From IMG/VR virus record IMGVR_UViG_3300042691_055965, positions 165,189 to 229,188 of that record: DNA of 64,000 nucleotides. One strand, 5' to 3'. Shown here piece after piece: positions 1,565 through 31,831 of this stretch; position 1 is the first letter of the stretch; every line of letters starts with the position of its first letter. Under the pieces are notes generated by a model that saw only the letters and a list, made by a program, of their open reading frames with translations, was not told the origin of the DNA and made no database searches. The position numbers and the translations under genes are program-made.

Positions 1565-2646
1565 TGACACCTGAAAAAATAAATATTGTAATTTCACCTG
1601 AAGTTCTTTCTTCAGACATCGTTCAAGAAACATATAAAAATAACAATTTTGGTGTTTATGAAGGATTGTCCTACATTTTAAGTGGTGGGACGGGAAATAC
1701 TTCGTTATTGACGGGTTTGACTATTCCCGTATTACTTACCCAAAAAATAAATGACATCGGTTATTATTCACCATTTGAAGGTTTTTTGGATCAGATAGAC
1801 ACAGTGACAAATTTTATATATTCAGGTAATCCGATAAACCCATACAACGTTAAAATATTTAATTCATCATCTTATAATACATCGAGTTTTTTGAATAATT
1901 CGACATATAAAATTAATTGGGGTGACGGAAACGAAACTTCGGTTTTGGATATAACAAACAACTTACAAGAACACACATATAATACTGTTAGTCAAACATA
2001 CACAATAACACTAACACAAACAAATTCTTGGGGAATCACACAAGTTGAAAAAACAGTATCACTACCTTTTACTGGTGTTACAATAGATAATCAATTAGGT
2101 AATGTTACTTTCAATCAGTTAGGTGGAAATTGGTCAGCTACACCAATTAGTTACAATTATATATTCACGGGTGATTCTAATAACAATATAAACCAACAAG
2201 TTTCAAGTTATTATACACCTGTTCCTTTTTTAGTTTCAGGATATACCATTTCAAGTTTAAACCAATTAAGAAGGTACGGACCTCAATCATATACTGTTGG
2301 ATACATACAAACATTAGGTAATGGAAGTATTGGGTATGTGACTGAAATTAATAGTTCTTATACTGCCTATACAATTGATAATATATTATATTATGATTTA
2401 AGTAATGGGAAAACACTTTTTCTATTAAACTCTTCAGGATTTACGTCTAACGATATTGTGGTTTCTGGGTTAACCAAAAATGAATATCTATTGGATTTTG
2501 TTATGGATCCTGAAATACAAACAGACATTCTACTTGAACGTGGTAGATATTCTGCATTAGAATCTTTATTAAGATTGGGTGAAGTAGATAATATTGGAGA
2601 CATGGAAAGATATGGATATGGTTTTTTCCGAATTAATACAACTTAA
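1564..2646 (+). CDS. putative virion protein with PKD-like motif
   Basis: YKINWGDG..HTY..TYTITLT PKD-like signature; Ser/Thr/Asn rich. Confidence 0.6.
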   Translation: MTPEKINIVISPEVLSSDIVQETYKNNNFGVYEGLSYILSGGTGNTSLLTGLTIPVLLTQKINDIGYYSPFEGFLDQIDTVTNFIYSGNPINPYNVKIFNSSSYNTSSFLNNSTYKINWGDGNETSVLDITNNLQEHTYNTVSQTYTITLTQTNSWGITQVEKTVSLPFTGVTIDNQLGNVTFNQLGGNWSATPISYNYIFTGDSNNNINQQVSSYYTPVPFLVSGYTISSLNQLRRYGPQSYTVGYIQTLGNGSIGYVTEINSSYTAYTIDNILYYDLSNGKTLFLLNSSGFTSNDIVVSGLTKNEYLLDFVMDPEIQTDILLERGRYSALESLLRLGEVDNIGDMERYGYGFFRINTT

Positions 2647-2682: not shown

Positions 2683-3591
2683 ATGGCACTTGGAGCTTAT
2701 GGTATAGTTAGACCGGCAGATGTTTCACCACAGGACGTTGAAATAATTTTGCATTACACACCATCAAGGGATGTAACTACAAATTTCGTATTAAAAAAAT
2801 TAAATGCAGCAAATATCTTAACACCATATTTTCACAATTCAAATACAGGAGGTAATGCAAATGTTGAAATCTTAGGTGGTTTATACAACTTAAGATTACC
2901 TGCTAGTGAATTCACAAATGTTGGAATTTATACCTTGTATATTCGTCCCGCAGAAATCAGAACATCGATTACGGATTGTGGTGTGTTATCGGCACTTCCA
3001 AACGTAAAAGGAATTATCATAGATGTTAATGATGTTCCACAACAGTTCAGAAATAAATTTGTCAACCAAGGTTTAGTAGGTTTTAGAATAGAGTACTTAA
3101 ATTCAGATGGAACAAAAATTCCTAATTTTTATAGAATCGTAACGTCTGCATTCTTTTGTGAACCTGTAATTTCGGATCAAACTAACACGTCACAGAAGGC
3201 TATAAGATACCGATATGTTGAAGGAAACAGTGATTTAATATTTTTAACACTTTCGCCTAGTTCATCACCAACAAACAAACCAAATGCGACACCATTTATT
3301 GGACAACCAAATCAAAATATTATAATTACAAATACATTTTTTAATCCAGTGACTATGGAGGTTCAAATTGCTAATTATGATATAGACACATTGGCGATTG
3401 CTTTGTATGGTAACCAAACTAAAAGTATTGATGATGGGATTTATACATTATACGACACTGCTGGAAATATATACAAACAATACAACTTATTTGAAGTTAG
3501 GGATAACTTTAATGAACTACTTTATGAAGTTAGACAAGATAGAGGTGCTAACATTGATTTTAGTAAAAACTTTACAAATATTATTAGTTAA
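2683..3591 (+). CDS. putative baseplate/structural protein
   Basis: 302 aa; upstream TATTTATA motif at 2662; structural context. Confidence 0.55.
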   Translation: MALGAYGIVRPADVSPQDVEIILHYTPSRDVTTNFVLKKLNAANILTPYFHNSNTGGNANVEILGGLYNLRLPASEFTNVGIYTLYIRPAEIRTSITDCGVLSALPNVKGIIIDVNDVPQQFRNKFVNQGLVGFRIEYLNSDGTKIPNFYRIVTSAFFCEPVISDQTNTSQKAIRYRYVEGNSDLIFLTLSPSSSPTNKPNATPFIGQPNQNIIITNTFFNPVTMEVQIANYDIDTLAIALYGNQTKSIDDGIYTLYDTAGNIYKQYNLFEVRDNFNELLYEVRQDRGANIDFSKNFTNIIS

Positions 3592-6572: not shown

Positions 6573-9268
6573 TGGCTTGTATTTCGGGATTTACACTTGG
6601 TGGTTATTATAGTTATGTAGATTGTTGTGGTTTGGTTCAGGCGGGGGTTTCACCTGGACTTGAAAATGTTTGTGTAAGTGCATCAACTTCAGGAACATCA
6701 ATTGGGGTTTTACTTGATAGCGGTTCAACCTGTACGCAAAACTGTAATCAAGGACCTTTAAGTTATGTGTTTACTGTAACTGGGGTTTGTGGTAACCCAT
6801 CAGGGACTGTAACTATTCAATCTTTTGGTGGTATACCTCCGTATACTATTGATAATATTACTCCTGGAAGTTTATCAGCACAAACAAGTTCATCAGATAT
6901 CACTTTTACTGGTTTAACAGGTGGTACTTATGTCTTTAGATTAAATGACTCATTAGGTATACAAAATAATGAAATTTTATTTAATGTAGAAATTTCTGAT
7001 TGTTTTGTTGCGACAATAAATAATACAGATGGAACAACTTGTGGTAGCCAAAATGGTAGTTTTTCTATAGATGTAACTTCTACTGCCGCACCATATAATA
7101 TAGTTCTTTATAAAAATAATGCAATATTTTCGACATTTTTAACAAACACGGTTCCTTATAATGTTACATCATTAGATGAAGGAATATATTATGCAACTGT
7201 TTTTGATTATGGTATGGTAAGTGCCGTGACGGATAATGTTGTTATAAACCCAAGTAGTGGAACTACATTTGGTATATGGAAAGTTAATACATCTAACTGT
7301 GTACCTAATTCAGGAAAACTTGCGGTTACTGGATTGACAGGTAATGGACCTTATAGTTTTTTATGGTCTAATGGTGAAACAACACAAATTATTACTGGAC
7401 TTACTGTCGGAACTTACACAGTTACTGTCACTGATTTTTATGGTTGCGAAACTGTTGCGTCTGAAACGGTTGGTGTTGCTAATCCTTTAGGTGTAGGTTT
7501 AATTACTTCAGTTAACCCGTCTTGTTTTGATTCAAATGGTTCGATTACTGTTCAACTTACAGGAGGAACCGCTCCTTATACGATATCCGCTAATACAGGA
7601 TATCAAACTTTTACCTTAAGTGATACATTTACCGTACCAAATTTACCTACAGGTCCCTATAACATTTTGGTTAAAGATGCAAATCTTTGTCCTTTATTAG
7701 TAAACGCTTCTTTGACAACCGTAAATGGTTTTGACATTATAAGTACAAACATTACAAATACAACGTGTAATGGTAATGACGGTGAAGTGAATATTGTTTT
7801 AACTGGAATACCTCCATTCTTATTTCAATTAACAGCGCTTACAAACAATTCGATATCAACGCAATTTTCTTCAAATTTAAACACTACATTTAGTAATTTA
7901 AATTCGGGAAATTATTTATTGTCCATTTCAGGGCAATCAAGTGGATGTGAATTTATACAACCAATAACTATTCAAAATCAACAGAATTTCCAAGTTACAG
8001 CAACGACAATTGATAGTTCATGTGGAAGTGCTTCTGGATCGGTTATTATAGAAGTCGGAACAGGGTACACGTCACCTCTTGATTATTACCTTATTGACAA
8101 TCAAAATACTCAATCTATAATCGATTATCCTTTTTCATCTTTTACCTTCACATCTATTCTACCTGGAAATTATACAGTCCAAGTAGTTGATGGTAATAAC
8201 TGTACCGTATCAATTCCTGTCACAGTAGGTGCTGGTTCAAATTTTGTCAGTAACGTGATTACAACAAACTGTGTTTCAGGACAAGATGGTATTGCTCAAG
8301 TCGTCATATATGATGGGGTGCCGCCTTTTACTTATAGTTGGCAAGGAGTATTATCCGCTCAAACAGGTTCTACTGTTACAAATTTAAGTGGTGGTACTTA
8401 CACTGTTTCGGTTACAGATGCTAGTGGATGTACAAACTTTCATAATTTTACAATAGTATGTGGTTTCAATAGTTATAGTGGGTCGACAACATATCTTATA
8501 TGTGAAAGAGATTTTATCACAACAAGTGGAACTAAAAGAGGAATACCGGAAATGGTAAGTGAAGGTTTCTTGGATTTAACGACAGGGTACACTAATTGTA
8601 TTTTAAATTCAGCGTCCGTGACTTGTCAAATTACATTGAACGGAAGTGCGTTTACACAAACAATAGTTTTTTGGAATGACGCATCATGGCAAAGTGCAAT
8701 AGAAACAATATTAGGTAGTATTCCTGAAATAGGACAGTACGAAGTTAATTTATTAAATAATACTTTATATATAGAGTCAAATTGTCAGGGAGGAATTGAT
8801 CCATTAGGTGAAACTGATTTTACATTAGAATTGGTTGTAGATTATGACATTAGTTGTGCTGAAATTGCACCTACACCGACACCTACACCTACGCCAACAC
8901 CTACGCCAACACCTACACCTACGCCAACACCTACACCAACACCTTCGCCAACGCCTACTTATACATCAACAACGTGGTATTCTAATTCTGTTGTGTTTAG
9001 TACTGCAAACGCAACAAATCATTGTTTAACATTCCCTGATGATTGTAATGTGAATTTTTATACAAGTTCAGTGAGTTTAAATGTTGGTGATATTTTATAT
9101 GATGATCCATTACTGACTAATGATTCTGGAAATGTTGCGGTAAATTATGGACCATTTGGTGGTGGTTGGGGATGGATATATCTAACAGATACCTGTCCTA
9201 TATCAAGTACAATTTACCTCGTACAATTAAGAAGTAATGGTGAAATATTAGACATACAAACTTGTTAA
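6572..9268 (+). CDS. SprB-repeat, Cys-rich virion appendage/adhesin with (PT)n linker
   Basis: Repeated GG.PPYT..W / L..GTYTVTVTD..C units typical of SprB repeats; PT tract near the C-terminus. Confidence 0.7.
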   Translation: MACISGFTLGGYYSYVDCCGLVQAGVSPGLENVCVSASTSGTSIGVLLDSGSTCTQNCNQGPLSYVFTVTGVCGNPSGTVTIQSFGGIPPYTIDNITPGSLSAQTSSSDITFTGLTGGTYVFRLNDSLGIQNNEILFNVEISDCFVATINNTDGTTCGSQNGSFSIDVTSTAAPYNIVLYKNNAIFSTFLTNTVPYNVTSLDEGIYYATVFDYGMVSAVTDNVVINPSSGTTFGIWKVNTSNCVPNSGKLAVTGLTGNGPYSFLWSNGETTQIITGLTVGTYTVTVTDFYGCETVASETVGVANPLGVGLITSVNPSCFDSNGSITVQLTGGTAPYTISANTGYQTFTLSDTFTVPNLPTGPYNILVKDANLCPLLVNASLTTVNGFDIISTNITNTTCNGNDGEVNIVLTGIPPFLFQLTALTNNSISTQFSSNLNTTFSNLNSGNYLLSISGQSSGCEFIQPITIQNQQNFQVTATTIDSSCGSASGSVIIEVGTGYTSPLDYYLIDNQNTQSIIDYPFSSFTFTSILPGNYTVQVVDGNNCTVSIPVTVGAGSNFVSNVITTNCVSGQDGIAQVVIYDGVPPFTYSWQGVLSAQTGSTVTNLSGGTYTVSVTDASGCTNFHNFTIVCGFNSYSGSTTYLICERDFITTSGTKRGIPEMVSEGFLDLTTGYTNCILNSASVTCQITLNGSAFTQTIVFWNDASWQSAIETILGSIPEIGQYEVNLLNNTLYIESNCQGGIDPLGETDFTLELVVDYDISCAEIAPTPTPTPTPTPTPTPTPTPTPTPTPSPTPTYTSTTWYSNSVVFSTANATNHCLTFPDDCNVNFYTSSVSLNVGDILYDDPLLTNDSGNVAVNYGPFGGGWGWIYLTDTCPISSTIYLVQLRSNGEILDIQTC
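8870..8959 (+). repeat. Pro-Thr dipeptide coding repeat
   Basis: (ccN acN)n encoding PTPTPT...PSPTPT. Confidence 0.95.
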
Positions 9269-9891: not shown

Positions 9892-10905
9892 ATGCCAATA
9901 ACTTATCAATATTTAACCGATAGAACTTTTGCACCATCAAGTGCAATTACACCTAATGCGTTAATTCATATTGTAGATCCTAATGACATTTCACAAAACC
10001 CAGACGGTTCGTCATATAAAGTAGAATTAACAAATTTAACATCCATATTTGGTTCAAGTGGTGACACATTCGTAACAGGTGGAACATATTCTGCAGGAAC
10101 TGCAACATTCACAAATAATACTGGAGGAACATTCAATGTAACAGGATTTACGTTGGCATCAACTGGTGGTACAAATATTAATACAATTATAAGTGGTTCT
10201 ACTACTGTTATTAATTTGAATAATACCATAAATTTAACGGGAGTTACCGCAACTACAATAAGTGCAACAACATATCAAAATTTACCTGGTAGTTCATCGG
10301 CAAATTGTATAACTGAACTTTTTGTGGGTAGAATAAAACCATGTACAACAACTTTCACTGTAAGTGGTGTTACAGTACTTACAAATAGTCCGGGTAAAAA
10401 TCCTCTGAAAGTAGTTGCTTCTGGAAATAGTACTAGTGAACCTATTATGAGTGTTTCAGGAAGTAGTGGTGACTTATTTTCAGTAAAAGATAGTTTGACG
10501 GGAAATTTGTTTTCAGTAAACAACATTTCAGGAATCCCTATTATGGAAGTTTATGATAATAATAAAATGAAGTTGGGTTCATTTTCTTCACCAGCATCAT
10601 ATACTACAGTGAAATTTTTACCAACAACAGGTTTAACTGATGTCTTTTCTATTGATATTAGTGGAAATACGGGGGCGTGGTTTGACTATACTGTTGTAAA
10701 TGCAATAACACCAAGTGCCAGGGCGGGACAAATTATGGCAATTTTTAGTGCAAATACAGTAAACTATGTAGAATCAACAACAAGTAGTATTGGAGTTACA
10801 TCGGCAATTACTTTGAGTTTGTCTGCAAATTCAACAAACTGTATATTACAAACATCGGCAACCACTTTGGGGTGGGAAGTCAAAACAATAATAAGAAGTA
10901 TTTAA
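9892..10905 (+). CDS. putative tail fibre/appendage protein
   Basis: Thr/Ser/Gly rich; N-terminal LTD.T..LIHIV..ND..QN..GSSY shared with 15979. Confidence 0.6.
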   Translation: MPITYQYLTDRTFAPSSAITPNALIHIVDPNDISQNPDGSSYKVELTNLTSIFGSSGDTFVTGGTYSAGTATFTNNTGGTFNVTGFTLASTGGTNINTIISGSTTVINLNNTINLTGVTATTISATTYQNLPGSSSANCITELFVGRIKPCTTTFTVSGVTVLTNSPGKNPLKVVASGNSTSEPIMSVSGSSGDLFSVKDSLTGNLFSVNNISGIPIMEVYDNNKMKLGSFSSPASYTTVKFLPTTGLTDVFSIDISGNTGAWFDYTVVNAITPSARAGQIMAIFSANTVNYVESTTSSIGVTSAITLSLSANSTNCILQTSATTLGWEVKTIIRSI

Positions 10906-10914
10906 TTTTGAATT

Positions 10915-11181
10915 ATGGACATTTTTGAAAACAGAAGATATATGATTATAAACTATAGTGAAATCGATAGTGTAGATTTTAGTCAAATATTTCAAACTTA
11001 CAAAGACGAATTAAGACTATCGTTAGATGGTACAAAAACTGTAATTAAATGGGACGGGGACACACCAAGTTCAGTTGAATCATTGATATATAAAGACGGA
11101 CCATATACCCACAAAGATATTGTTACGATTATGGTTAGTGATGAATGGACTGATAACTCCGAAACCCCAAGAATTAGGTAA
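10915..11181 (+). CDS. small hypothetical protein accompanying fibre genes
   Basis: 88 aa, LRLSLDGTKTVIKW..YTH..I...M.S.EW. Confidence 0.6.
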   Translation: MDIFENRRYMIINYSEIDSVDFSQIFQTYKDELRLSLDGTKTVIKWDGDTPSSVESLIYKDGPYTHKDIVTIMVSDEWTDNSETPRIR

Positions 11182-11192
11182 TATTTAAGAAA

Positions 11193-11927
11193 ATGATAAA
11201 AGTAGGAGCAAAAGAAATAGTAAAAGAAGGATTGGTATGTTTTATGGATCCTGCAAACACGAGTTCATATCAACCAAGTGGTACAACATATTATGATTTG
11301 TCTAGTTTTGCTGCAAAAGCCGTTTTTCAAAATTTTGATACAAATAATAACTTCGATCCGAGTGACGGTGGTGGTAGTATAATTTTTGATGGTGTAGATG
11401 ATAGTATTCGTGTTTTTACATATGGTAGTGTAGGTATTACTAATAGTGCTGAAACTGACTCCTATTTATTTACTGATGAAGTAACATTAGAGGCGTTTGT
11501 AAAACCAACATCGTTTACTAGTCAACCTAACATAATAGGTAAAGGTACAAATTTAGGATATAGATGTAGATTTACGTCTGATCAAAGATTTTGGTTATAT
11601 TCTTCTAGTGGTGCTAGTATTAATAACATTCAAACCGCATCCAATTTGATAAACCCAAATGAATGGGTTCATGTTGTTGCGGTTTTTAGTCAGTCGGGTC
11701 TTTTTGCTTATGTAAATGGAGTGCTGCAGGCATCAAATTCACAACCATTTTTACCCGACATATTAAACCCAACGAGTATAGCTTGTGTATTACATTTTGG
11801 TAGATTTTGTAGTTCTGGTGAACTATTTGAAGGTAAAATGGGTATTATAAGGGTTTACCATGCGGCTCTTTCCGCTGATCAAGTACTATCAAACTTCAAT
11901 GCTGATAGGGATAGATACGGAATATAA
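11193..11927 (+). CDS. LamG/concanavalin A-like lectin domain protein
   Basis: FDGVDD, NEWVHVVAVF, YVNG, FEGKMGIIRVYHAALSADQV motifs. Confidence 0.8.
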   Translation: MIKVGAKEIVKEGLVCFMDPANTSSYQPSGTTYYDLSSFAAKAVFQNFDTNNNFDPSDGGGSIIFDGVDDSIRVFTYGSVGITNSAETDSYLFTDEVTLEAFVKPTSFTSQPNIIGKGTNLGYRCRFTSDQRFWLYSSSGASINNIQTASNLINPNEWVHVVAVFSQSGLFAYVNGVLQASNSQPFLPDILNPTSIACVLHFGRFCSSGELFEGKMGIIRVYHAALSADQVLSNFNADRDRYGI

Positions 11928-11990
11928 AATTATATATTTCTTTATACAATCTAACATTTATTAATTTTTCTATTTTCATAACATTCTAAT

Positions 11991-13187
11991 ATGAAAATAT
12001 TTGTACAAATTGCATCTTATCGTGATCCTGAACTTTTACCAACTATTAGGGATTGTATCAATAAGGCAAAATACCCTGAAAATTTAACTTTTGGTATCTG
12101 TTGGCAACGTGACGAAACAGAAACTTTGGAAGAATTTTTAAATGATTATAGATTTAGAATATTAGATTATCATTGGAGTGAAAGTAAAGGGCTGTGTTGG
12201 GCTCGAAGTGAAATACAAAAACTTTGGAAAGGGGAAGAATATACTCTACAATTAGATTCACATCATAGGTTTTTGAAAAATTGGGATGAAGAATTAATCG
12301 AAATGATGAACATGACAGGTTCGAAAAAACCAATAATTTCAACATATGCTGGAATGTATCAACCATCAGACGACAAGTTATTAAATTTTGAACCTTATAA
12401 AATGGTGGCATCTAATTTCACACCAGGTGGTACTATACTTTTTAGACCTCACGCAATCCCAAACTGGGAAACATTGGAAAAACCAATACCTGCAAGATTT
12501 GTCAGTGGACACTTTTTTTTCACAATTGGTAAACACTGTGAAGAATATAAATATGATCCAAACATATATTTTGCTGGTGATGAAATTAGTCTATCGATTC
12601 GTTCATTTACATTAGGTTATGATTTATTTCACCCATATAAGACAATTATTTGGCACGAATACACAAGGGAAGGTAGAACAAAACACTGGTCGGATTTCAA
12701 TGAGGAAAATAAAAATAAAGGTGTTGTTGAAAAACAATGGTGGGAAATGGATAATGAATCCAAAAGAAGATTGAGACATATGTTGCAAGAAGAAGATAAT
12801 AATATTGATCTTGGAATTTATGGGTTAGGAAATGAAAGGACACATAAAGAATACGAAGATTATGCTGGTATAAATTTTAGACTTAAAAAACTTCACCCCG
12901 AAACGTTAAAAGGTACAAATCCACCAATTAATGATACTACAGAATGGTATTTGGAAGAAGAAAAAACATATACCTATACTTTAGAAATACCCAAAACTGA
13001 AAATTTTAAATTCATATATATTGGTATAGAAAATGAAAAAGGTGATGTTTTATACAGACAAGATTTATTAGAATATCAAAATAAATTAGACATAACAATT
13101 AAAAGTTTTTCCAAACCACACAAATGGATTTATTGGGTAAACGATATCGATGGGAATTGGATTAATAGGGTAGATACAAATTTATGA
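11991..13187 (+). CDS. glycosyltransferase, Pfam GlcNAc / GT60 (Gnt1-like) family
   Basis: IFVQIASYRDPEL, GLCWARS..Q.L..GEEY.LQLDSH.RF..WD, FAGDEISLSIR..T.GYD motifs. Confidence 0.8.
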   Translation: MKIFVQIASYRDPELLPTIRDCINKAKYPENLTFGICWQRDETETLEEFLNDYRFRILDYHWSESKGLCWARSEIQKLWKGEEYTLQLDSHHRFLKNWDEELIEMMNMTGSKKPIISTYAGMYQPSDDKLLNFEPYKMVASNFTPGGTILFRPHAIPNWETLEKPIPARFVSGHFFFTIGKHCEEYKYDPNIYFAGDEISLSIRSFTLGYDLFHPYKTIIWHEYTREGRTKHWSDFNEENKNKGVVEKQWWEMDNESKRRLRHMLQEEDNNIDLGIYGLGNERTHKEYEDYAGINFRLKKLHPETLKGTNPPINDTTEWYLEEEKTYTYTLEIPKTENFKFIYIGIENEKGDVLYRQDLLEYQNKLDITIKSFSKPHKWIYWVNDIDGNWINRVDTNL

Positions 13188-13981
13188 AAATAGGAGCATT
13201 TTATCAGTCAGGACACAAGTTAGTTGCGTGTTATAAAGCATTGGAACAATTAAGAAAAGTATATCCTAATATACCTGTTGCTTTATATGAAGACGGTTCT
13301 AAAATATTGGAACAGGTAGCAAAAAAATTTAATTGTGATTATAAATGGATTGAACAACAAGGGACAAACCACCCTACATCTGGAAGGGTTTTTGTTAAAG
13401 AAGGTGGGCAAATTGATTGGCTACGAAGAATCTATGATGCTTGTTTGACAACACTAAAAGATGTTGAATGGGTGGTACACTACGAAGACGACGTTTGGTG
13501 TAGGTTTGAAATAACCAAACCACCAAAATTTGATATTTCAGGAGCCAATGGTCCATTATATACAAATGAATTATATTCATATTTAAAAAATAGATTTGAT
13601 GTTTACGATGAGTCAAGACATCATTGGAGTGAAAATGGTTCTTTACAAAGTTACGGTGCCTGTGGTGGTGCTATTTTTAATAGAGAAAAATTTATCTACA
13701 TATTTGAAAATATCGACAAAGTTCCGTGGGATTATATCTATAAATTGGATACCAGACCGATTGAGTGGTGTGATGCAACGCTTTCGTTTTTATTTCAGTA
13801 TTTTGGATTTACTAGTGGGGTATGGGAAGATTGGGCACAATACGATAGTAAAAATATAGGTAATTGGTGGGATAAAAGTGGTTGGTCGGTTCCTATGGAA
13901 GAACAACCTAATGTTGCTTTTATTCATGCGTATAAACATTATTATTGTTATAAACCTGAAGATATTGAAATAGATTTTTAA
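13184..13981 (+). CDS. putative GT-A fold glycosyltransferase
   Basis: ALEQLRKVYP..P.ALYEDG, WVVHYEDD (DxD-like), GACGGAIFN, D..LS..F; coupled to the upstream GT. Confidence 0.65.
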   Translation: MKIGAFYQSGHKLVACYKALEQLRKVYPNIPVALYEDGSKILEQVAKKFNCDYKWIEQQGTNHPTSGRVFVKEGGQIDWLRRIYDACLTTLKDVEWVVHYEDDVWCRFEITKPPKFDISGANGPLYTNELYSYLKNRFDVYDESRHHWSENGSLQSYGACGGAIFNREKFIYIFENIDKVPWDYIYKLDTRPIEWCDATLSFLFQYFGFTSGVWEDWAQYDSKNIGNWWDKSGWSVPMEEQPNVAFIHAYKHYYCYKPEDIEIDF

Positions 13982-14028
13982 AAAAATTTATGCAAATCAG
14001 ATTTTCAATTATTTATATATAAAAAAGA

Positions 14029-15657
14029 GTGCCAAATTTATTATTTGAAGGTTGTTGTTACGAGGGTTATCAGTATTTCACTGATGAAGCAGCTTGGATT
14101 GCAACTGGTGGAACCGCGACTACAGGACAAACATATCATTTTTCAGGTGACCCAATAGTTCCCGATGGTTGTTATACTATAGTATCGGCATTCACATCAG
14201 GTTTTACATCTGTATCATTTACAAATTTAGATGGTGTTTATACAACACAAACAGGATGTACCGATTCTTTGTGTTTGACAGGTGTTTGTTGTAGTAATGA
14301 TGTTTGCATTAACATTTCGGTTTCAACATATAGTGCGTATAGCGGTAATTATGTTGTTGCTGGAAGTTATAATTCTTACCCTTATTGGACAGGTGCAACA
14401 CAACCTGGGTATATTGGGTTCAATGGTACAAATTGGTGTCTTTCTGATTCACTAACCGGAACTTGTATTTTTTATGGGTCGAACCCAACATTATCAACTT
14501 GCCCTGATTTAGATACTTCAGTTTATAATACAGGAATTTGTCCACCTGTACCAACACCATTCGATCCGTGTGGTGCATTTGATTTTGATGTTTTAGTTGC
14601 TTGTGATATACCAACACCAACTCCAACACCAACACCGACACCAACACCTACACCGACTCCCACACCAAGTCCAACACCTAATTTATGTTCAGGATTTTCT
14701 GTGTCAATATCTTTTAGTGCTACAACACCTACACCAACACCAACACCAACACCTACACCAACGCCTACGGTTTATCCTTATCCAATAACTGGACAAAGTG
14801 TGACTTTTGTTATTGACGAAGGTTATTTTAATTGTGTTTCAATAAAACAATTACAGGATTGTGATAATGGTGAAACATATTTAGTTGCCGATCCTTTAAT
14901 TTTCCAATTATCGGCAATAACCACAGGCACTACGTTCTTGGGCGCTATAAATGGAGAATTCAAGTGTGTAACATATGTGGGTGATGTTTTGGGAAGTCCA
15001 TCCGATTTGTTAACATTTATATCACTTACATACAGTGGGGATTGTAGTTCATGTATCGCGCCAACACCAACTCCAACACCTACACCAAGCCCAACACCAA
15101 CACCGACACCTACACCGACACCTACACCGACACCAACATATAGTGCGAACACATCATTCGTGTTTACATCTTGTACATCAAATTCGATGATAATTCAAAG
15201 TTTGATTCCACCTACTAACATTTCTGTTGGTAACGTTGTAAAAAATAGTTCAGGAAATTGTTTCACTTATATTGGTTATTTTGTGAATTATACTCCACCA
15301 TCTGGGTTTATTTGGTCGACTATAAATTCATTTACGGGTGTTACTGCAACAACTTACACGACTTGTTTAGAGTGTTTGACACCAACACCAACACCTACAC
15401 CATTATTCAATACATATAACGGTAAAGGTGAATTCGGAGTATCGTGTCCTGTTTGTGAATTGACAAATGGTGGTACAAATGTGACTTTCTATAGGTCTTA
15501 TAGTACTTTATCTTTACAGACAGGGGATTATATTTATGAAGATACTGCACTTACCATACCTGTAATATTATCATACATTAAGTACGGTGGTAAAATATAC
15601 AGTGTTGATAGTAATGGTATGATAACAGAATTTTGTATAGTAAACGGTAATTGTTAA
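14029..15657 (+). CDS. Cys-rich virion appendage protein with four (PT)n tracts
   Basis: GTG start after TATTTATA; PT tracts separate small Cys-rich domains. Confidence 0.7.
14611..15402 (+). repeat. four Pro-Thr coding tracts (about 14611-14679, 14722-14769, 15061-15138, 15378-15402)
   Basis: ccaaca/cctaca/ccgaca hexamer runs. Confidence 0.9.
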
Positions 15658-15658
15658 T

Positions 15659-15958
15659 ATGGCGACATTTGTTACAGTAAACACAGCAACAGGACAGTTC
15701 CCAATAAATGTTTGGGTTTGTAATGATTGTACCACGGGGGCTACAAATATTTGTCAATACATAGACACAATTGATAATGTTGGTGAAATTCCGTTCACAT
15801 TTCAACTACCAACAATTTATGAAACAGCACTTTCATATTCCATCAAATTTATTGACAGTTTAGGATGTGAAGTGTGTGATGCTTATTCGACTTATAAACA
15901 ATTCCAAGATGGTGATCCATTTATTTTCATGGACGGCACAACTTATGAATTTCAATAA
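15659..15958 (+). CDS. small Cys-containing structural/adaptor protein (paralogue 3)
   Basis: C-terminal KQFQDGDPFIFMDGTTYEFQ matches 9579. Confidence 0.6.
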   Translation: MATFVTVNTATGQFPINVWVCNDCTTGATNICQYIDTIDNVGEIPFTFQLPTIYETALSYSIKFIDSLGCEVCDAYSTYKQFQDGDPFIFMDGTTYEFQ

Positions 15959-15978
15959 ACATTATATATATTAATTAA

Positions 15979-16506
15979 ATGGCAAGATTAACAGATAAAA
16001 CAACAGCAACTGCAGTAACCCAAAGTAGTTTAATTCACATTGTGAATACTAATGATGTTACACAAAATAGTGCGGGTTCATCGTATAGAGCCGATTTAGG
16101 ACAAGTAGCAAATGCGATTGGCGGGTATCAATATTATAGTGCCGTAACAATTACATCTTCAGATATATTAACTTCTAATTCAGTTCCTTTTGAAATATTA
16201 CCTAATCCTGGTGCTAATAGTTACTATGATGCTAAATTTATTATGGAATATACGTATAATACAACAGGATACGTTTCGGGTGCTGAAAGTGTTATTTCAG
16301 ACGGAGTAAATAGTGTTTATGCTTTGGGTGATTTGGCAAATTTTGTTACAGATACCGTAAATATCGTGCAAAGTATTGAAACCTTACAACCCGCAAAAAT
16401 GCAACCAAACAATCCTTTGTATTTCTTCACAGAAGTCGCGGATCCAACTACAGGTGATGGTGAAATACTACTTAAAATTTGGTATACAATAAGAACATTC
16501 GGATAA
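15979..16506 (+). CDS. putative short fibre protein
   Basis: N-terminal anchor shared with 9892. Confidence 0.55.
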   Translation: MARLTDKTTATAVTQSSLIHIVNTNDVTQNSAGSSYRADLGQVANAIGGYQYYSAVTITSSDILTSNSVPFEILPNPGANSYYDAKFIMEYTYNTTGYVSGAESVISDGVNSVYALGDLANFVTDTVNIVQSIETLQPAKMQPNNPLYFFTEVADPTTGDGEILLKIWYTIRTFG

Positions 16507-16507
16507 T

Positions 16508-18157
16508 ATGGCAGGATATACTGGAAATACTTGTGATATTTTAACCATCTTCCCAATGGGTTTGATTTGTAGTTCAACAAATGCGTATACTCCATTTACA
16601 AATGATGGTGCGATAACATTGTATATTACAGGAGGTACACCACCGTATACAATAAATTGGAGTAATGGTGCTCATTCACAAAATTTAACAAACTTACAAT
16701 CAGGAAATTACACTGCCACGGTAATTGATTACTATGGGGATTTTACAGCAACAACTACTTGTAATGTTGGATTTGATACTTTTTATTTAGAAAAATTCAC
16801 AAATTGTTTGGATTCAAACAATCAAATTTATTTTTTAGCAAATATTAATAATCAATACCAAGTTGATAAAGTTTATTCTTTAAGTTCACAACTTGGATGT
16901 TGGATTAGTGAAGGTTTACTTTTATATAGTGCTGAAACATATAGTAATTTTACAGCAACAACGGTTTCGGGACCTTTTGATACTTGTCCTGAATGTTTAC
17001 CAACAGTACCTGTGATTTTTAATACTTCTGGATTGTGTTTGACACTAACATCTTTTAATGTTGTAACACAAACACAATATTATTCAGGAGGTACAATCAA
17101 TGGATATCCGTCATGGACATCCAACACATCGAATGAAGTTATTTATTTTGATAACACACAATCTAAATGGAAAGTTTCTGGATGGACGGGTGGAGGTATC
17201 CCACAACTTCAATCAATACAAAGTCCACCAATCGGAGCTTGGACTGTAGTAGGGTTACCACAGTTATTGGCAGGTAATACTGCGGTTGCCGTAACACAAG
17301 GGGATTGTCAAGCAGTAATTGTTGCAAATATCAGTAGTACACCACCAAGTTGTGAAGGTGCAACCGATGGTTATATAAATGTAACATCGGTTATTGGCGG
17401 TACACCACCATATACATATTCATTAGTGAATGATCAAAATTTTTATCAAATATCAAATATATTCAATGGTTTGTCAGAAGGTGGTTATACAGTATATGTT
17501 CAAGACGTTTTTGGAAATATCACTATAAGTCAAGTTAATTTGAATTCTTTAGTTAGCCCAACATTATATACGTTGAATTTAGTTGTGCAACAAGTAAATC
17601 TTGGTAACAACTCGACAACAAACCAAACTAGAAATTGGACTTACCAAGTTACAGTATCACCAGCACTTCCAATAGGTAAACAGATCAATTTTGATATAAC
17701 ACACGTATCAACATCAATTTATGGAACAACCAACAATGGTTCACCTGTATTATCTTATACCCAATCAACAGGAACTACAGGTGGTGGACAATACTTAACA
17801 AGTACAACACCAACAACCACTTCTACTTCAGCAACAACTGTTGCATGTACCACATTAAATAATTACACACAACACGTAACAACTACAACCATAAGACAAT
17901 ATAACGCAAGGATAACAGGTACATTTGGAACGGATAGTGTTTTTGGTAACGTCACACAAAGTGTAACTGTTATAAATGGTGGAACACCATGTGCAGTATT
18001 CGGTAATATTAATGATAGTGTTTCAATAACAAATATACAATTGGTAAACCAAGCACCGTGTGAATTGGTGAACACAACCGTTCAACCCGTGTCTTTCGGT
18101 GTTTCTAAAACGGGAACACCTGGAATAGTTGGAAGTAATGTAAATGTGAGTGGATAA
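16508..18157 (+). CDS. SprB-repeat virion protein
   Basis: GGTPPYTINWSNG..NL..GNYT and GGTPPYTYSL..FNGL..G.YTVYVQD. Confidence 0.7.
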   Translation: MAGYTGNTCDILTIFPMGLICSSTNAYTPFTNDGAITLYITGGTPPYTINWSNGAHSQNLTNLQSGNYTATVIDYYGDFTATTTCNVGFDTFYLEKFTNCLDSNNQIYFLANINNQYQVDKVYSLSSQLGCWISEGLLLYSAETYSNFTATTVSGPFDTCPECLPTVPVIFNTSGLCLTLTSFNVVTQTQYYSGGTINGYPSWTSNTSNEVIYFDNTQSKWKVSGWTGGGIPQLQSIQSPPIGAWTVVGLPQLLAGNTAVAVTQGDCQAVIVANISSTPPSCEGATDGYINVTSVIGGTPPYTYSLVNDQNFYQISNIFNGLSEGGYTVYVQDVFGNITISQVNLNSLVSPTLYTLNLVVQQVNLGNNSTTNQTRNWTYQVTVSPALPIGKQINFDITHVSTSIYGTTNNGSPVLSYTQSTGTTGGGQYLTSTTPTTTSTSATTVACTTLNNYTQHVTTTTIRQYNARITGTFGTDSVFGNVTQSVTVINGGTPCAVFGNINDSVSITNIQLVNQAPCELVNTTVQPVSFGVSKTGTPGIVGSNVNVSG

Positions 18158-18183
18158 AATAAGATAAAAAGTATTTATAAAAT

Positions 18184-20385
18184 ATGTCATACATAATCAA
18201 AACAACAAGTGGTTTAATAAATACAATTCTAACAGACGCTGCTAGGAAAAAAATATCGCAAGGAAACTTTAAGATTTCTTATTTTCAAGTAGGTGATAGT
18301 GAAGTGTGTTATGATTGTATTACAGGATTGAAACCAACCAATCTAAATGTTTTGATGCCACAATATAACGCACAAAACACAACACCGGCACCTGAAAGTA
18401 ATCGTTTACAAGTAAAGTATCCACTTTACGTAGACTCTACATCAGGAAGTACTTACGGTATACCTTTTGATTCATCATTTGTTGATAACATCTATAATAC
18501 TGCAGCACCAAGAGGATTTTTTAGTGGTAATGGTTTGACTTACAGTGCGTACACATCATCGGCATATACAATTACACCTAATTTTATTGTTGATAACACA
18601 ACTTTAAATTCAGGGACTACTTTAGTATTGTCTGCTAACACTTTAGATGTTACCGTTTCAGGAACAGTAACTCCTGGTATGATATTAAATTTATTTACAA
18701 ATAATTCTGTCACACCATTAAGTGGAAACGCACCATTATTTACTTATGTTGTTGTTGGAATAACTGGTGATACCTATTCGGCAAACACAGTTACAGTTGA
18801 AGTTGATAGACAATTACCTGACTTTTTGAATATGGGTTACACAGGAAATTCTATTGCCATTTTCTACCCATCTGGAATGACTGCTCTTTATGATTCCGTG
18901 ACACCTGCACCTTATTGGGCTACAAATGTAATTAATTTCGAAACAAATTGTGACGTATCACAAGCTGACGTTAAAATATGGAATATGAACATTCCATGGA
19001 CTGAATCGCCAGCTGGTTTATTTGTCAGTCAAAATTTGGATTACAATTCGTTCAAATCTACAGGATATACGGGTTCTAAAGAATATTTTGGTTACAATAG
19101 TGATACAGGACAAGTGGATACTGGAGGTGTTTATTTTGTGAACTCTCTTGGACAAAAAATAACGTTAAATCCATCAGATTCAAAGGCAGTTGCAATATTA
19201 CACTATACAAACCAAGCTATTGATAATTTTTATGGTGAAAAGTTCGCTCAACAAGAATATGATTCATCAAATCCGGGTGGAACAGGACAAGCAAGAAACT
19301 TTAAAATAAGTATTCCTTGGTTGATGTGGCATAAAAATTCAAATGGCACAATTGGAGAAGAATTTTTTACTGATCCAAGTGGGTTTACTTCAATTGACTT
19401 ATTTCAAGTTTATTATATCAAATCTAAAAAAGATGCGGAATTCAACAACCCTGGTATTAGATATTACTATCTTTGGGATACACATGCTAACATCGATGGA
19501 TACCCAAACAGAGTTGGTAAAGTTTTCCCTGACTTGAAAATGGTAATTTTTGATGATGATGAAATTGTTGCAGCAATGTCATATAAATCAAACAGAAGTT
19601 GGACATTACCAGCACCTAAAATAGGTACAATAATTCCAAATGCTTGTGAAGGTGTTCTTGGATTAGATGAGGGTTTATTAAGTGCTAACACACAAACCGC
19701 ATTCGTTACGTATAGATTTAATAATAGTGCTTTTACAAATTCATTACATTGTAATTATTACACTAATATTTCACCACAGTTAGTTGATCCTATTCAAACA
19801 ACCTACAATATATTTTTAAAATTTGGAAACGAATTTCCGTTTTTAGTTTCGGACGTTAGTACTATACCAACTGGATATACCGCAAATGAAATGAAAGTAT
19901 TGGTACAAAAAGTGGCATCAGGTACAACAAGACCTAATCCTACACAATGGAAAGAAATTGATGTAATGTCACAACTATCGGCAACTACTAGTAACAATTT
20001 TTTAACACTATCAGGTTTGACAGGAGCAACTATACAAATTACCAAAGATATGTATGATACTGCACCAACATACAACTTGAATAACTATATTGATTTACCA
20101 ACAGCGGCATTAAGTGGAATTACTCTTAATTTTGGGGGTGAATACTTTTTCTACGGTTCAATTCAAACGGATATTCAAGCAACAATATATGTGATGAATT
20201 ATCTATGTAATTTGGGACAAACACAGTTTTTAAGTTCAACCAATCCGACTTGGGATGGGACACCACCGTACATCACTGAAGTTGCTCTTTACAATGAAAA
20301 TAAAGAACTTATGGTTATTTCAAAGATACAATCCCCTGAAAAAAGACAGGGAATCCAACAGTATCCAGTTAAACTTGATTTTTAA
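18184..20385 (+). CDS. conserved tail/baseplate structural protein
   Basis: N-terminal ILTD.ARKKI..G.F.ISYF..GDSE and C-terminal YITEVALYN...EL....K...P typical of tail-fibre attachment/baseplate proteins. Confidence 0.6.
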   Translation: MSYIIKTTSGLINTILTDAARKKISQGNFKISYFQVGDSEVCYDCITGLKPTNLNVLMPQYNAQNTTPAPESNRLQVKYPLYVDSTSGSTYGIPFDSSFVDNIYNTAAPRGFFSGNGLTYSAYTSSAYTITPNFIVDNTTLNSGTTLVLSANTLDVTVSGTVTPGMILNLFTNNSVTPLSGNAPLFTYVVVGITGDTYSANTVTVEVDRQLPDFLNMGYTGNSIAIFYPSGMTALYDSVTPAPYWATNVINFETNCDVSQADVKIWNMNIPWTESPAGLFVSQNLDYNSFKSTGYTGSKEYFGYNSDTGQVDTGGVYFVNSLGQKITLNPSDSKAVAILHYTNQAIDNFYGEKFAQQEYDSSNPGGTGQARNFKISIPWLMWHKNSNGTIGEEFFTDPSGFTSIDLFQVYYIKSKKDAEFNNPGIRYYYLWDTHANIDGYPNRVGKVFPDLKMVIFDDDEIVAAMSYKSNRSWTLPAPKIGTIIPNACEGVLGLDEGLLSANTQTAFVTYRFNNSAFTNSLHCNYYTNISPQLVDPIQTTYNIFLKFGNEFPFLVSDVSTIPTGYTANEMKVLVQKVASGTTRPNPTQWKEIDVMSQLSATTSNNFLTLSGLTGATIQITKDMYDTAPTYNLNNYIDLPTAALSGITLNFGGEYFFYGSIQTDIQATIYVMNYLCNLGQTQFLSSTNPTWDGTPPYITEVALYNENKELMVISKIQSPEKRQGIQQYPVKLDF

Positions 20386-31348: not shown

Positions 31349-31350
31349 AA

Positions 31351-31395
31351 AAATTTGGCAGAATCAAACCTTTATCATATCTTTGTATCACAAAC
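31351..31395 (+). promoter_or_regulatory. Bacteroidota-type promoter, repeat copy 1
   Basis: TTTG at about -33 and TATCTTTG (-7) at 31378; 40/45 identical to 31787-31831. Confidence 0.75.
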
Positions 31396-31409
31396 AAAAA
31401 AGGTAAGAT

Positions 31410-31802: not shown

Positions 31803-31831
31803 AATCTCTATCATATCTTTGTATCACAAAC
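31787..31831 (+). promoter_or_regulatory. Bacteroidota-type promoter, repeat copy 2
   Basis: TATCTTTG at 31814; direct repeat of 31351-31395. Confidence 0.75.

What the first reader, a model, noticed from the sequence alone, without database searches (positions are those of the whole stretch)
9892..20385. Pervasive [S/T]-[G/A]-x-T tetrapeptide in structural proteins: possible modification sequon
Seen: SGDT, TGGT, SAGT, TGFT, SGST, TGVT, SATT, SANT, SAIT, TGYT, SAYT, SAFT, SGMT, SGFT and SGIT recur densely in 9892, 14029, 16508, 18184, 6572 and 1564, and appear rare in the replication genes (not counted). Inference: this may be more than Ser/Thr richness and could be the recognition sequon of the adjacent phage glycosyltransferases. 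It differs from the host Bacteroidota D-[ST]-x sequon.
Basis: inference. Interest (0 to 1): 0.6.

Follow-up and report, generated by a model that had tools for sequence, protein, structure and literature searches.

The report
Four-residue Ser/Thr word in phage tail proteins
A short amino-acid word (hydrophobic)-[Ser/Thr]-[Gly/Ala]-x-Thr is about five times too frequent in the tail, fibre and sheath proteins of an uncultured 229-kb phage that also carries an unusually large set of sugar-transfer genes, so it may mark where the phage sugar-coats its own tail, though nobody has tested this.

Summary
In the window, seven virion ORFs carry 94 [ST][GA]xT words against 18-24 expected (z = 16-20 under local-block and dipeptide-preserving shuffles). 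The 57 downstream replication-type ORFs have 7 against 6.7. The word is sharply defined: permuted or offset versions are about 1x, position 4 must be Thr, and an aliphatic residue at -1 raises enrichment to 9x. It is a protein-level signal. Part of it comes from repeats (fibre modules, SprB/Ig domains). However, 13 mutually dissimilar virion proteins still show 101 against 18.8.

Across relatives, the motif classes are under purifying selection. At deep divergence the density is kept while about half of the sites move. T4, XacN1 and an unrelated phage (G002) lack the signature.

The adjacent genes are a GT60-family polypeptide GlcNAc-transferase homolog and a GT6-like GT-A enzyme. Elsewhere the genome holds a 16-kb glycan island with a strain-variable cassette.

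The best reading is a virion O-glycosylation sequon (confidence about 0.45). The specific link to the adjacent GT is unproven and partly contradicted, because the GT occurs in phages without the signature. The main rival is a lineage-specific structural idiom.

The parts
1..708 (+). C-terminal part of a 567-aa virion-module protein (G000 164193-165896); the whole protein has 3 motifs vs 0.7 expected, and its homologs in G007 and G001 have 5 and 8 motifs at different positions
1564..2646 (+). Motif-rich virion protein with no family hit; 8 motifs vs 0.8. Motif Ser/Thr are far more conserved than other Ser/Thr (0.92/0.87 vs 0.46/0.45)
3591..6572 (+). 993-aa virion-module protein; 5 motifs vs 1.3, of which 4 are shared with the G007 ortholog
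6563..9268 (+). 901-aa protein built from repeated SprB/Ig-type domains plus a PT-rich linker; 22 motifs vs 4.3, many inside 'TGLTxGTY' and 'TGGTxPYT' domain signatures
9892..10905 (+). 337-aa fibre-like protein; 17 motifs vs 2.3. It shares paralogous repeat modules with six fibre-like proteins elsewhere in the genome, and no full-length ortholog was found in related loci (hypervariable)
11193..11927 (+). Concanavalin-A-like (Laminin_G_3) domain virion protein; 2 motifs vs 0.4
11991..13187 (+). Glycosyltransferase of the PF11397 / CAZy GT60 family (polypeptide alpha-GlcNAc-transferase family); candidate initiating enzyme. It carries no motif itself
   Evidence: 228.5 bits, cut-off 21; phrog_24687, E = 4e-98; present in every near-complete genome of the lineage
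13184..13981 (+). Second glycosyltransferase: GT-A fold closest to GT6 (ABO transferases, BoGT6a), with an invariant H-Y-E-D-D-V-W block. Its start overlaps the stop codon of the GT60-like gene
14029..15657 (+). 542-aa virion protein with PT-rich linkers; 14 motifs vs 2.9. Turnover is high: site retention is 0.38, and orthologs carry 7.6 motifs at other columns
15979..16506 (+). 175-aa protein whose N-terminus resembles that of 9892-10905; 2 motifs vs 0.7
16508..18157 (+). 549-aa SprB-repeat protein; 9 motifs vs 2.9
18184..20385 (+). 733-aa non-repetitive virion protein; 19 motifs vs 1.9 (the highest z). Homologs keep 10-21 motifs down to about 30% identity

Best explanation
The word [LIV]-[S/T]-[G/A]-x-T (x is not Pro or Lys; I/Y/A is preferred next, then N/S) is probably a recognition sequon for phage-encoded, cytoplasmic O-glycosylation of tail, fibre, baseplate-type and outer-sheath proteins.

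Inferred mechanism:
1. During late infection a soluble glycosyltransferase recognises the word on newly made virion proteins and attaches a first sugar to one of its hydroxyl residues. The most likely enzyme is the GT60-family homolog at 11991-13187. The acceptor is either the invariant Thr or the S/T at position 1.
2. The overlapping GT6-like enzyme (13184-13981), and GTs from a 16-kb glycan island elsewhere in the genome, extend the sugar into a strain-variable glycan.
3. Selection keeps many such sites on exposed virion proteins while individual sites come and go.

Shown here: the enrichment, its specificity, its restriction to virion proteins, class-level conservation, site turnover, the enzyme families, and the variable glycan cassette.

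Inferred only: that any glycan is attached, which residue is the acceptor, and which GT reads the word.

Some copies (the 'LSGGTxTG'-type fibre repeat and the SprB/Ig signatures) are probably structural in origin whether or not they are also modified.
For: (1) Enrichment is robust: 94 vs 18-24, z = 16-20.

(2) The word is narrowly defined. Controls are about 1x, Thr is obligatory at position 4, and Asn/Asp cannot replace S/T at position 1.

(3) The signal is protein-level, not DNA-level.

(4) It is confined to about 25 virion ORFs genome-wide, while 184 other ORFs are at chance (42 vs 40). In the sheath, 9 of 11 copies lie at residues 124-361 and none lie in the conserved C-terminal core at 792-1069.

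(5) It is not just repeats. Thirteen mutually dissimilar proteins have 101 vs 18.8, and hhalign finds no hidden homology for p18184 or p1564.

(6) Purifying selection acts on the classes. S/T is kept in 81-83% of orthologs vs 56-63% background, A to G swaps are 3x background, Thr at position 4 is kept in 73% vs 51%, and x is free. There are 6-22 conserved motif columns per family against 0-4 for control motifs.

(7) Density is kept while positions turn over. Even with +-6 columns of tolerance, 50 sites match and 100 do not, and most unmatched sites lie in aligned columns. Orthologs carry more motifs at new columns than chance allows for the whole protein.

(8) The same word, with the same specificity, appears in the distant relative G007 (102 vs 22.7) and in lineage-specific proteins.

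(9) It is not generic for tail proteins. T4 virion proteins have 24 vs 27.8, XacN1 has 163 vs 170 and G002 has 68 vs 51.

(10) The enzymes fit. There is a PF11397/GT60 hit at E = 2e-67. GT60 enzymes are polypeptide alpha-GlcNAc-transferases, and the Skp1 enzyme of that family is a soluble cytosolic protein (PMC8724618). The T. cruzi enzyme acts on Thr (PMC3769586). The neighbouring gene has a GT6-like fold.

(11) The glycan island holds at least 9 GT domains, an RmlB/C/D-like pathway, a UDP-GlcNAc 2-epimerase and methyltransferases. A different, fucose-type cassette occupies the same slot in G007.

(12) No lipid-carrier initiating transferase is encoded. No hydroxymethylase or C5-methyltransferase needed for DNA glycosylation was found.
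Against: There is no direct evidence that any of these proteins is glycosylated.

The GT60-like gene is horizontally mobile and does not track the signature. G002 shares only 5 genes with this phage yet has the GT at 71% identity and almost no enrichment. XacN1 has a 36-42% homolog and no enrichment. G001 has a 75% identical GT but a weaker signature than loci with a 40-48% GT.

Every near-complete genome of the lineage has the GT, so the association is a single phylogenetic event.

About 65% of copies in the enriched G000 proteins lie in paralogous fibre modules or SprB/Ig domains (185 of 286).

The flanking preference for hydrophobic residues at -1 and +4 is what a strand-turn-strand element would show.

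In the p18184 model, the motifs' coil/edge location is no different from that of other Ser/Thr, and exposure could not be computed.

The major head protein is not enriched (3 vs 1.2).

Non-virion phage proteins show no avoidance of the word.
Confidence: 0.45

Rival explanations
1. Lineage-specific structural idiom. The word is a preferred way for this lineage's beta-rich tail proteins to end or start a strand: a small residue allows a tight turn, a beta-branched Thr starts the next strand, and hydrophobic residues on both sides pack into the core. It is inherited and re-invented by ordinary folding constraints, with no modification. The glycosyltransferases act on something else.
For: Hydrophobic preference at -1 and +4 and avoidance of charge. 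17 of 19 copies in the p18184 model lie in coil or at element edges. Many copies sit in recognised domain signatures such as SprB repeats and 'GLxxGTY' corners and in fibre repeat modules. Many sites are positionally conserved at 50-70% identity. The GT does not track the signature.
Against: T4, XacN1 and G002 tail, fibre and sheath proteins of similar composition show no enrichment, so it is not a general folding rule. About half of the sites move within the same fold at deeper divergence while density stays 4-8x above chance. Asn/Asp do not substitute for S/T at position 1, Ser does not substitute for Thr at position 4, and Gly and Ala are interchangeable. That pattern is unusual for turn geometry. 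The word also occurs in at least 13 unrelated proteins.
Confidence: 0.3
2. The word is read by a trans-acting factor other than a glycosyltransferase. Examples are another modifying enzyme (kinase, methyltransferase), an assembly chaperone, or a host or environmental binding partner. The glycan genes serve DNA modification or remodelling of the host surface.
For: The sequence evidence shows selection for a word but does not say what reads it. Phage GT clusters can glycosylate DNA, and some lie next to structural genes (10.1101/2023.12.21.572611). The GT60-like gene moves between unrelated phages like an accessory gene. In many relatives it lies among non-structural genes.
Against: No thymidylate-synthase/hydroxymethylase family and no C5-methyltransferase were found in the 229 kb. 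The TET search was uninformative, and the record is only 76% complete. No candidate kinase or other writer was identified. A word made of two hydroxyl residues and a small residue, next to polypeptide-type GT genes, fits glycosylation most simply.
Confidence: 0.12
3. By-product of composition and paralogy. The excess comes only from Ser/Thr/Gly richness plus duplicated repeat modules, and the word itself is not selected.
For: Seven fibre-like paralogs and two SprB proteins hold 185 of the 286 copies in the enriched G000 proteins.
Against: Local-block and dipeptide-preserving shuffles still give z = 16-20. Thirteen dissimilar proteins give 101 vs 18.8. Control words of identical composition are at chance. 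The underlying DNA 12-mers are all different.
Confidence: 0.03

Closest known systems
Mycobacteriophage virion glycosylation (Freeman et al. 2023, as cited in PMC12619734)
   Same: Phage-encoded glycosyltransferases are reported to decorate the phage's own structural proteins with glycans inside the host cytoplasm.
   Different: In that system the glycans sit on C-terminal stretches of the capsid and tail-tube subunits, and only a few GTs are involved; that no short sequon is defined there is from my own knowledge. Here the candidate targets are tail, fibre and sheath proteins, the head protein is not enriched, a defined four-residue word is scattered through folded proteins, and the toolkit has at least 11 GT domains. 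Nothing here has been shown experimentally.
Chlorovirus (PBCV-1) and giant-virus self-encoded glycosylation (reviewed in PMC9614988, PMC7019647; details from my own knowledge)
   Same: The virus encodes its own GTs and sugar-nucleotide and methyl-sugar enzymes, glycosylates structural proteins in the cytoplasm independently of host machinery, and uses atypical sequons.
   Different: Those are eukaryotic viruses with N-linked glycans on the major capsid protein. Here it is a bacteriophage, the linkage would be O-linked, and the targets are tail proteins.
CAZy GT60 polypeptide alpha-GlcNAc-transferases (Dictyostelium Gnt1/Gnt2, T. cruzi TcOGNT2; PMC8724618, PMC3769586)
   Same: ORF 11991-13187 matches the family model far above threshold. 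Family members transfer GlcNAc directly to protein hydroxyls. One is a soluble cytosolic enzyme, and the T. cruzi enzyme acts on Thr.
   Different: The known acceptors are Thr-rich mucin repeats or a hydroxyproline of Skp1, not a [ST][GA]xT word. No bacterial or phage member has been characterised. Donor and acceptor are unknown here.
Bacteroidota general O-glycosylation, sequon D-[S/T]-[A/I/L/V/M/T]
   Same: A three-to-four residue O-glycosylation sequon in the presumed host phylum.
   Different: That system is periplasmic and lipid-carrier based, and its sequon is not enriched here (12 vs 16). No lipid-carrier transferase is encoded by the phage.
SprB repeat / Ig-like domains and phage tail-fibre repeats
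   Same: p6563 and p16508 contain PF13573 repeats. The fibre paralogs contain repeat modules with 'SGGT' and 'TGGT' cores. These account for part of the counts.
   Different: They do not account for the 13 dissimilar proteins. T4 fibres, which are rich in repeats, show no enrichment.
Phage DNA sugar hypermodification clusters (Pyle et al., 10.1101/2023.12.21.572611)
   Same: Multi-GT clusters in phage genomes, sometimes near structural genes.
   Different: Those depend on a cytosine methyltransferase plus TET-type dioxygenase or a hydroxymethylase. None was found here, and they would not explain a protein word.

Membership tests
PF11397 / CAZy GT60 (ORF 11991-13187) | Sequence match to the family model above the curated threshold | tested here: met
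   228.5 bits against a cut-off of 21, E = 2.1e-67, covering profile positions 91-350 plus an N-terminal stretch; phrog_24687 'glycosyltransferase', E = 4e-98
PF11397 / CAZy GT60 (ORF 11991-13187) | Transfers GlcNAc from UDP-GlcNAc to a protein hydroxyl (Thr, Ser or Hyp) | not testable with these tools
   No characterised bacterial or phage member; no PDB relative by sequence; complex prediction gave no verdict
GT6 (ORF 13184-13981) | GT-A fold resembling GT6 structures | tested here: met
   AF2 model pLDDT 78, pTM 0.84. Foldseek top 50 are all GT6 enzymes: ABO GTA/GTB, alpha3GalT, BoGT6a; probability 1.0, E = 8e-9, TM about 0.5
GT6 (ORF 13184-13981) | Sequence membership (Pfam/HMM hit) and a DxD-type metal site | tested here: inconclusive
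   No Pfam hit at E <= 0.01 and no PDB hit with a profile. An invariant E-D-D block is present in 19 orthologs. I therefore call it GT6-like in fold, not a family member
Protein O-glycosylation sequon | Short word containing a hydroxyl acceptor, enriched in the target protein class over composition-matched controls | tested here: met
Protein O-glycosylation sequon | Sites lie on solvent-exposed surfaces of the folded or assembled protein | tested here: inconclusive
   Sheath copies avoid the conserved core, and 17/19 copies in the p18184 model are coil or edge, but so are other Ser/Thr. No coordinates were available to compute accessibility
Protein O-glycosylation sequon | The signature co-occurs with the cognate transferase across independent genomes | tested here: not met
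   For the GT60-like gene alone: G002 (71% identity) has 68 vs 51 and XacN1 (36-42%) has 163 vs 170. The wider GT frame (GT2, GT2_5+GT4 fusion) is shared only by genomes with the signature, but that is a single lineage
Protein O-glycosylation sequon | Glycan detected on the word by mass spectrometry | not testable with these tools
   Uncultured phage; no proteomic data
Bacteroidota general O-glycosylation | Enrichment or use of D-[ST]-[ALVIMT] on target proteins | tested here: not met
   12 observed vs 16.1 expected in the seven window proteins
SprB repeat (PF13573) proteins | Pfam match above threshold | tested here: met
   6563-9268: 64 bits; 16508-18157: 48 bits; cut-off 28. Internal domain repeats confirmed by hhalign
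Fold-intrinsic structural motif | Copies occupy the same positions in homologs that share the fold | tested here: inconclusive
   Retention is 0.38-0.80 at 40-70% identity. Across G000/G007/G001 about half of the sites are unmatched even with +-6 columns of tolerance, while density stays high

The most novel reading that the evidence does not exclude
A lineage of freshwater jumbo phages runs its own sequon-directed, cytoplasmic O-glycosylation system. A GT60-type polypeptide transferase starts a glycan on the word [LIV]-[S/T]-[G/A]-x-T on tail, fibre and outer-sheath proteins. A conserved GT frame plus a swappable gene cassette (a rhamnose/ManNAc type in this genome, a fucose type in a relative) then builds strain-specific glycans. 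The phage tail would thus have a variable sugar coat, comparable to bacterial O-antigen variation.
Probability: 0.3. Interest if true: 0.85.

Novelty: new variant of a known kind. Interest (0 to 1): 0.68.

Why it matters
Virion glycosylation by phage-encoded enzymes has so far been reported only in mycobacteriophages, as far as my literature searches showed; that no sequon is defined there is from my own knowledge. If this word is a sequon, three things follow.
- It would give the first predictive rule for locating glycosylation sites on phage tails.
- It would assign a substrate to bacterial and phage members of the GT60 family, none of which has been characterised.
- It would explain why a freshwater jumbo-phage lineage keeps several glycosyltransferases as core genes, a role left open in the 2025 moraphage description (PMC12619734).

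A variable glycan cassette on the adsorption apparatus would bear on host range, on evasion of host or grazer recognition, and on particle stability.

Even if the word proves to be purely structural, a four-residue word selected five-fold in unrelated proteins of one virus lineage, with moving sites, would be an unusual case of lineage-specific protein 'grammar'. The hypothesis can be tested directly with synthetic genes and peptides.

Tried and rejected
- **DNA-level cause.** Rejected: codons are diverse and the pattern occurs only in the coding frame.
- **Pure composition, local composition or dipeptide bias.** Rejected.
- **Repeats or paralogy as the sole cause.** Rejected.
- **Generic property of beta-rich tail proteins.** Rejected by the T4, XacN1 and G002 controls.
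- **Host Bacteroidota sequon.** Not enriched.
- **Testing the link by GT absence.** Impossible, because every near-complete genome of the lineage has a PF11397 gene.
- **Megablast of the region against cultured phages.** No match.
- **phmmer of the GT and a profile of p13184 against PDB sequences.** Nothing found.
- **Fold search of the p18184 model (pLDDT 64).** No significant match, so its virion role stays unknown.
- **Secondary-structure mapping of the motifs.** Not discriminating. Model coordinates are not exposed, so no accessibility could be computed.
- **Complex prediction of the GT with residues 50-130 of p9892.** No verdict, score 0.00; this is evidence neither for nor against.
- **Presence of p13184.** It does not correlate with motif richness across loci.
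- **TET/JBP search.** Uninformative, because the control genomes were silent.
- **Genome-collection scan for the GT.** Gave only a Verrucomicrobiales MAG contig (50%) and an Arcticibacterium MAG (34%), so there is no firm host call.
- **Literature searches for a [ST][GA]xT sequon or for GT60 in phages.** Nothing found.
- **Not used.** The reads tools, the search for homologous proteins and the large protein search were not needed.


Full report
**What the window is.** The window is the last 64 kb (positions 165189-229188) of a 229-kb IMG/VR virus record, estimated 76% complete. GC content is about 30%. The genome encodes a 1072-aa tail sheath, tail-fibre-like proteins, 'virion structural proteins' and a major head protein, so it is a jumbo myovirus. 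Megablast of the region against cultured phages found nothing. Window 1-20385 is the end of a structural module. From 20391 onward come a RuvC-like resolvase, primase, exonuclease, an SbcCD-like nuclease and similar genes.

**Check of the observation.** I counted [ST][GA]xT in every ORF against composition-preserving shuffles. Six proteins stand out.

| Window ORF | Observed | Expected |
|---|---|---|
| 9892-10905 | 17 | 2.3 |
| 18184-20385 | 19 | 1.9 |
| 6563-9268 | 22 | 4.3 |
| 14029-15657 | 14 | 2.9 |
| 1564-2646 | 8 | 0.8 |
| 16508-18157 | 9 | 2.9 |

- ORF 3591-6572 is weaker (5 vs 1.3).
- Harder nulls do not remove the excess. Pooled over the seven proteins, 94 copies compare with 17.7 under shuffling within 15-residue blocks (z = 20), 18.4 within 10-residue blocks, and 24.3 under dipeptide-preserving shuffles (z = 16).
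- The 57 ORFs downstream of 20390 have 7 against 6.7.
- Genome-wide the count is 366 against 118. All of the excess sits in about 25 ORFs, and the remaining 184 ORFs have 42 against 40.

**The word is narrowly defined.**
- The reverse word, the two permutations, and versions with the gap shortened or lengthened are 1.0-1.6x.
- Ser in place of the final Thr gives 0.9x.
- Asn or Asp in place of the first S/T gives about 1x.
- Ser, Asn or Pro in place of G/A gives 1x or less.
- All four sub-forms (SG, SA, TG, TA) are enriched.
- A hydrophobic residue at -1 raises the ratio to 9.1x. Over 286 copies, L/I/V are favoured and D/E/K/G avoided at -1, P and K are avoided at x, I/Y/A are favoured at +4, and N/S at +5.
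- An unbiased scan of residue pairs finds only sub-parts of this word, plus P.P from PT-rich linkers.
- The host-type sequon D[ST][ALVIMT] is not enriched (12 vs 16).
- The signal is at the protein level. Ser uses both codon families, 93 of 94 underlying 12-mers differ, and the degenerate DNA pattern occurs almost only in frame.

**What the copies sit in.** There are three components.
1. Seven fibre-like proteins, including window 9892-10905, share paralogous repeat modules that contain the word several times: 154 copies vs 36.8.
2. Two proteins (6563-9268 and 16508-18157) are strings of SprB/Ig-type domains (PF13573; hhalign probabilities up to 99%). There the word is part of signatures such as 'TGLTxGTY' and 'TGGTxPYT': 31 vs 8.1.
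3. Thirteen proteins have no detectable similarity to each other or to the above, by BLAST or by profile-profile comparison for those with alignments. They still carry 101 copies vs 18.8 (z about 19), with no extended consensus beyond the hydrophobic flank.

This third group includes 18184-20385, 1564-2646, 14029-15657 and the sheath. In the sheath, 9 of 11 copies lie at residues 124-361, two lie at 667-680, and none lie in the C-terminal core that matches sheath families (792-1069). From established knowledge of T4 gp18, the middle of a sheath protein forms the outer domains. The major head protein is not enriched (3 vs 1.2).

**Evolution.** I collected 65 viral contigs holding the GT and 80 holding homologs of 18184-20385.
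- In alignments at 40-70% identity, motif residues are more conserved than the same residues elsewhere. In 1564-2646, Ser is 0.92 vs 0.46 and Thr is 0.87 vs 0.45.
- Selection acts on classes. Position 1 stays S/T in 81-83% of orthologs against 56-63% for other S/T. A to G exchange at position 2 is three times background. Position 4 stays Thr in 73% and is rarely Ser. The x position is as free as an average residue.
- Each family has 6-22 motif columns conserved in at least half of its members, against 0-4 for control words.
- Sites also move. Orthologs keep the same total count but carry 1.8-10.7 copies at other columns, more than chance allows for the whole protein.
- Between this genome and two distant relatives (G007, 321 kb, complete; G001, 203 kb), seven families keep enrichment down to 28-33% identity. 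Even with +-6 columns of tolerance, only 50 sites match while 100 do not, and most unmatched sites lie in aligned columns.
- G007 shows the same word with the same specificity (102 vs 22.7; all control words about 1x). Each distant genome has one enriched protein with no homolog here.

Density maintained over moving sites is what one expects of a word read by something in trans. It is less expected of a fold-intrinsic element.

**Controls.** Three phages with beta-rich, Ser/Thr-rich virion proteins lack the signature.
- T4 virion set of 21 proteins: 24 vs 27.8.
- Xanthomonas jumbo phage XacN1, all 477 ORFs: 163 vs 170.
- The unrelated complete 154-kb phage G002: 68 vs 51.

So the word is not a general feature of tails and fibres.

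**The enzymes.**
- ORF 11991-13187 matches PF11397 at 228.5 bits (cut-off 21). This is CAZy GT60, the polypeptide alpha-GlcNAc-transferases that start mucin-type O-glycans in protists. Its Skp1-modifying member is a soluble cytosolic enzyme (PMC8724618). The T. cruzi enzyme acts on Thr (PMC3769586).
- The next ORF (13184-13981) overlaps the GT's stop codon and has an invariant H-Y-E-D-D-V-W block. Its model (pLDDT 78, pTM 0.84) matches GT6 enzymes that extend glycans (probability 1.0, E = 8e-9). It has no Pfam or PDB sequence hit, so I call it GT6-like in fold only.
- Outside the window, the genome has a 16-kb island (G000 83145-98720, minus strand). It holds at least 9 GT domains (GT2, GT4, GT32-like), an RmlB/C/D-like set, a UDP-GlcNAc 2-epimerase and two methyltransferases.
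- The island's outer genes are conserved in G001 and G007 and are absent from G002 and XacN1. The inner 11 genes are unique to this genome.
- G007 carries a different cassette in the same slot: a GDP-fucose route, GT11- and GT10-type transferases, a GT2 and methyltransferases. That layout resembles surface-glycan loci.
- No lipid-carrier initiating transferase is encoded (with working controls). This fits direct transfer to a soluble acceptor.
- No hydroxymethylase or C5-methyltransferase was found. That weakens, but does not exclude, the DNA-glycosylation alternative described by Pyle et al..

The GT60-like gene does not track the signature.
- It is present in every near-complete genome of the lineage, so absence cannot be used as a test.
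- It is also present at 71% identity in G002, which shares only five genes with this phage and has almost no enrichment.
- It is present at 36-42% identity in XacN1, which has none.
- Within the lineage, GT identity does not predict signature strength.
- The gene therefore behaves as a mobile accessory gene.

This argues against 'this GT alone implies the word'. It does not argue against 'the lineage's glycosylation system reads the word', because a newly acquired GT would still find chance-level sites, and only this lineage has the wider GT frame. It is still a single lineage, so it counts as one evolutionary observation.

**Structure.** The model of 18184-20385 (40-sequence alignment, pLDDT 64) places 17 of 19 copies in coil or at element edges, but other Ser/Thr tetrads do the same (87%). 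The fold search found no relative. The complex prediction of the GT with a motif-dense fragment gave no verdict and is not evidence either way.

**Verdict.** The word is real, specific, selected, restricted to tail-type virion proteins, and particular to one jumbo-phage lineage.
- The best explanation is a sequon for phage-encoded O-glycosylation of the tail apparatus (confidence about 0.45). The adjacent GT60-like enzyme is the most likely initiator, though this is unproven.
- The main rival is a lineage-specific strand-turn idiom (about 0.3).
- Part of the count certainly reflects repeats and Ig-type domain signatures.
- The lineage may be the 'moraphages' described in 2025, or related to them. 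Those are freshwater phages with predicted Flavobacteriia hosts and four core GT families of unassigned role (PMC12619734). I did not test membership.

Noticed in passing
G000 83145-98720 (outside the window; loci L007:3145-18720, minus strand): A 16-kb glycan-synthesis island: at least 9 GT domains, an RmlB/C/D-like deoxy-sugar set, a UDP-GlcNAc 2-epimerase, and FkbM-type and other methyltransferases. The outer genes are conserved in relatives. The inner 11-gene cassette is unique to this genome and is replaced in G007 (L188:3737-9907) by a GDP-fucose route plus GT11/GT10 fucosyltransferase-type genes.
   Followed up: partly
window 11991-13187; G002 31282-32523 (L086); L224 8001-9203: The GT60-like gene is horizontally mobile. 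It is 71% identical in an unrelated complete 154-kb phage that shares only 5 genes with this one, and 50% identical on a contig binned as a Verrucomicrobiales MAG. Within the lineage it sits either in the tail module or among non-structural genes.
   Followed up: partly
window 14029-15657 (residues about 230-250 and 360-372) and 6563-9268 (residues about 730-820): Pro-Thr dipeptide linkers (runs of TPTPTP) join domains. They give the strongest residue-pair signal (P.P, z = 9.2) and a spurious profile match between the two proteins. Such linkers are themselves classic O-glycosylation substrates in other systems.
   Followed up: no
window 9892-9960 and 15979-16050: The N-termini of the 337-aa fibre-like protein and the 175-aa protein resemble each other: each has a Thr-rich stretch with one motif copy followed by '...LIHIV'. 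This may be a shared attachment or adaptor segment.
   Followed up: no
window 11193-11927: A concanavalin-A-like (Laminin_G_3) lectin-fold virion protein lies directly upstream of the two glycosyltransferase genes. It has only two distant counterparts (about 28% identity) in the 65 related loci.
   Followed up: no
L201 (Xanthomonas phage XacN1, AP018399.1 213850-223508): In XacN1 the GT60-like gene is followed by a carbamoyltransferase, and a GT9-family gene lies nearby, next to a 3313-aa protein and a baseplate wedge gene. XacN1 has no motif signature at all.
   Followed up: partly
G000 whole record: IMG/VR classes the 229-kb record as a 'provirus', yet every region I annotated looks phage-like. 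I did not look for host flanks or an integrase.
   Followed up: no
window 9892-10905 versus related loci L014-L077: The most motif-dense protein has no full-length ortholog in any of the 65 syntenic loci. Only its repeat modules recur, which is the behaviour expected of a fast-evolving receptor-binding fibre.
   Followed up: no
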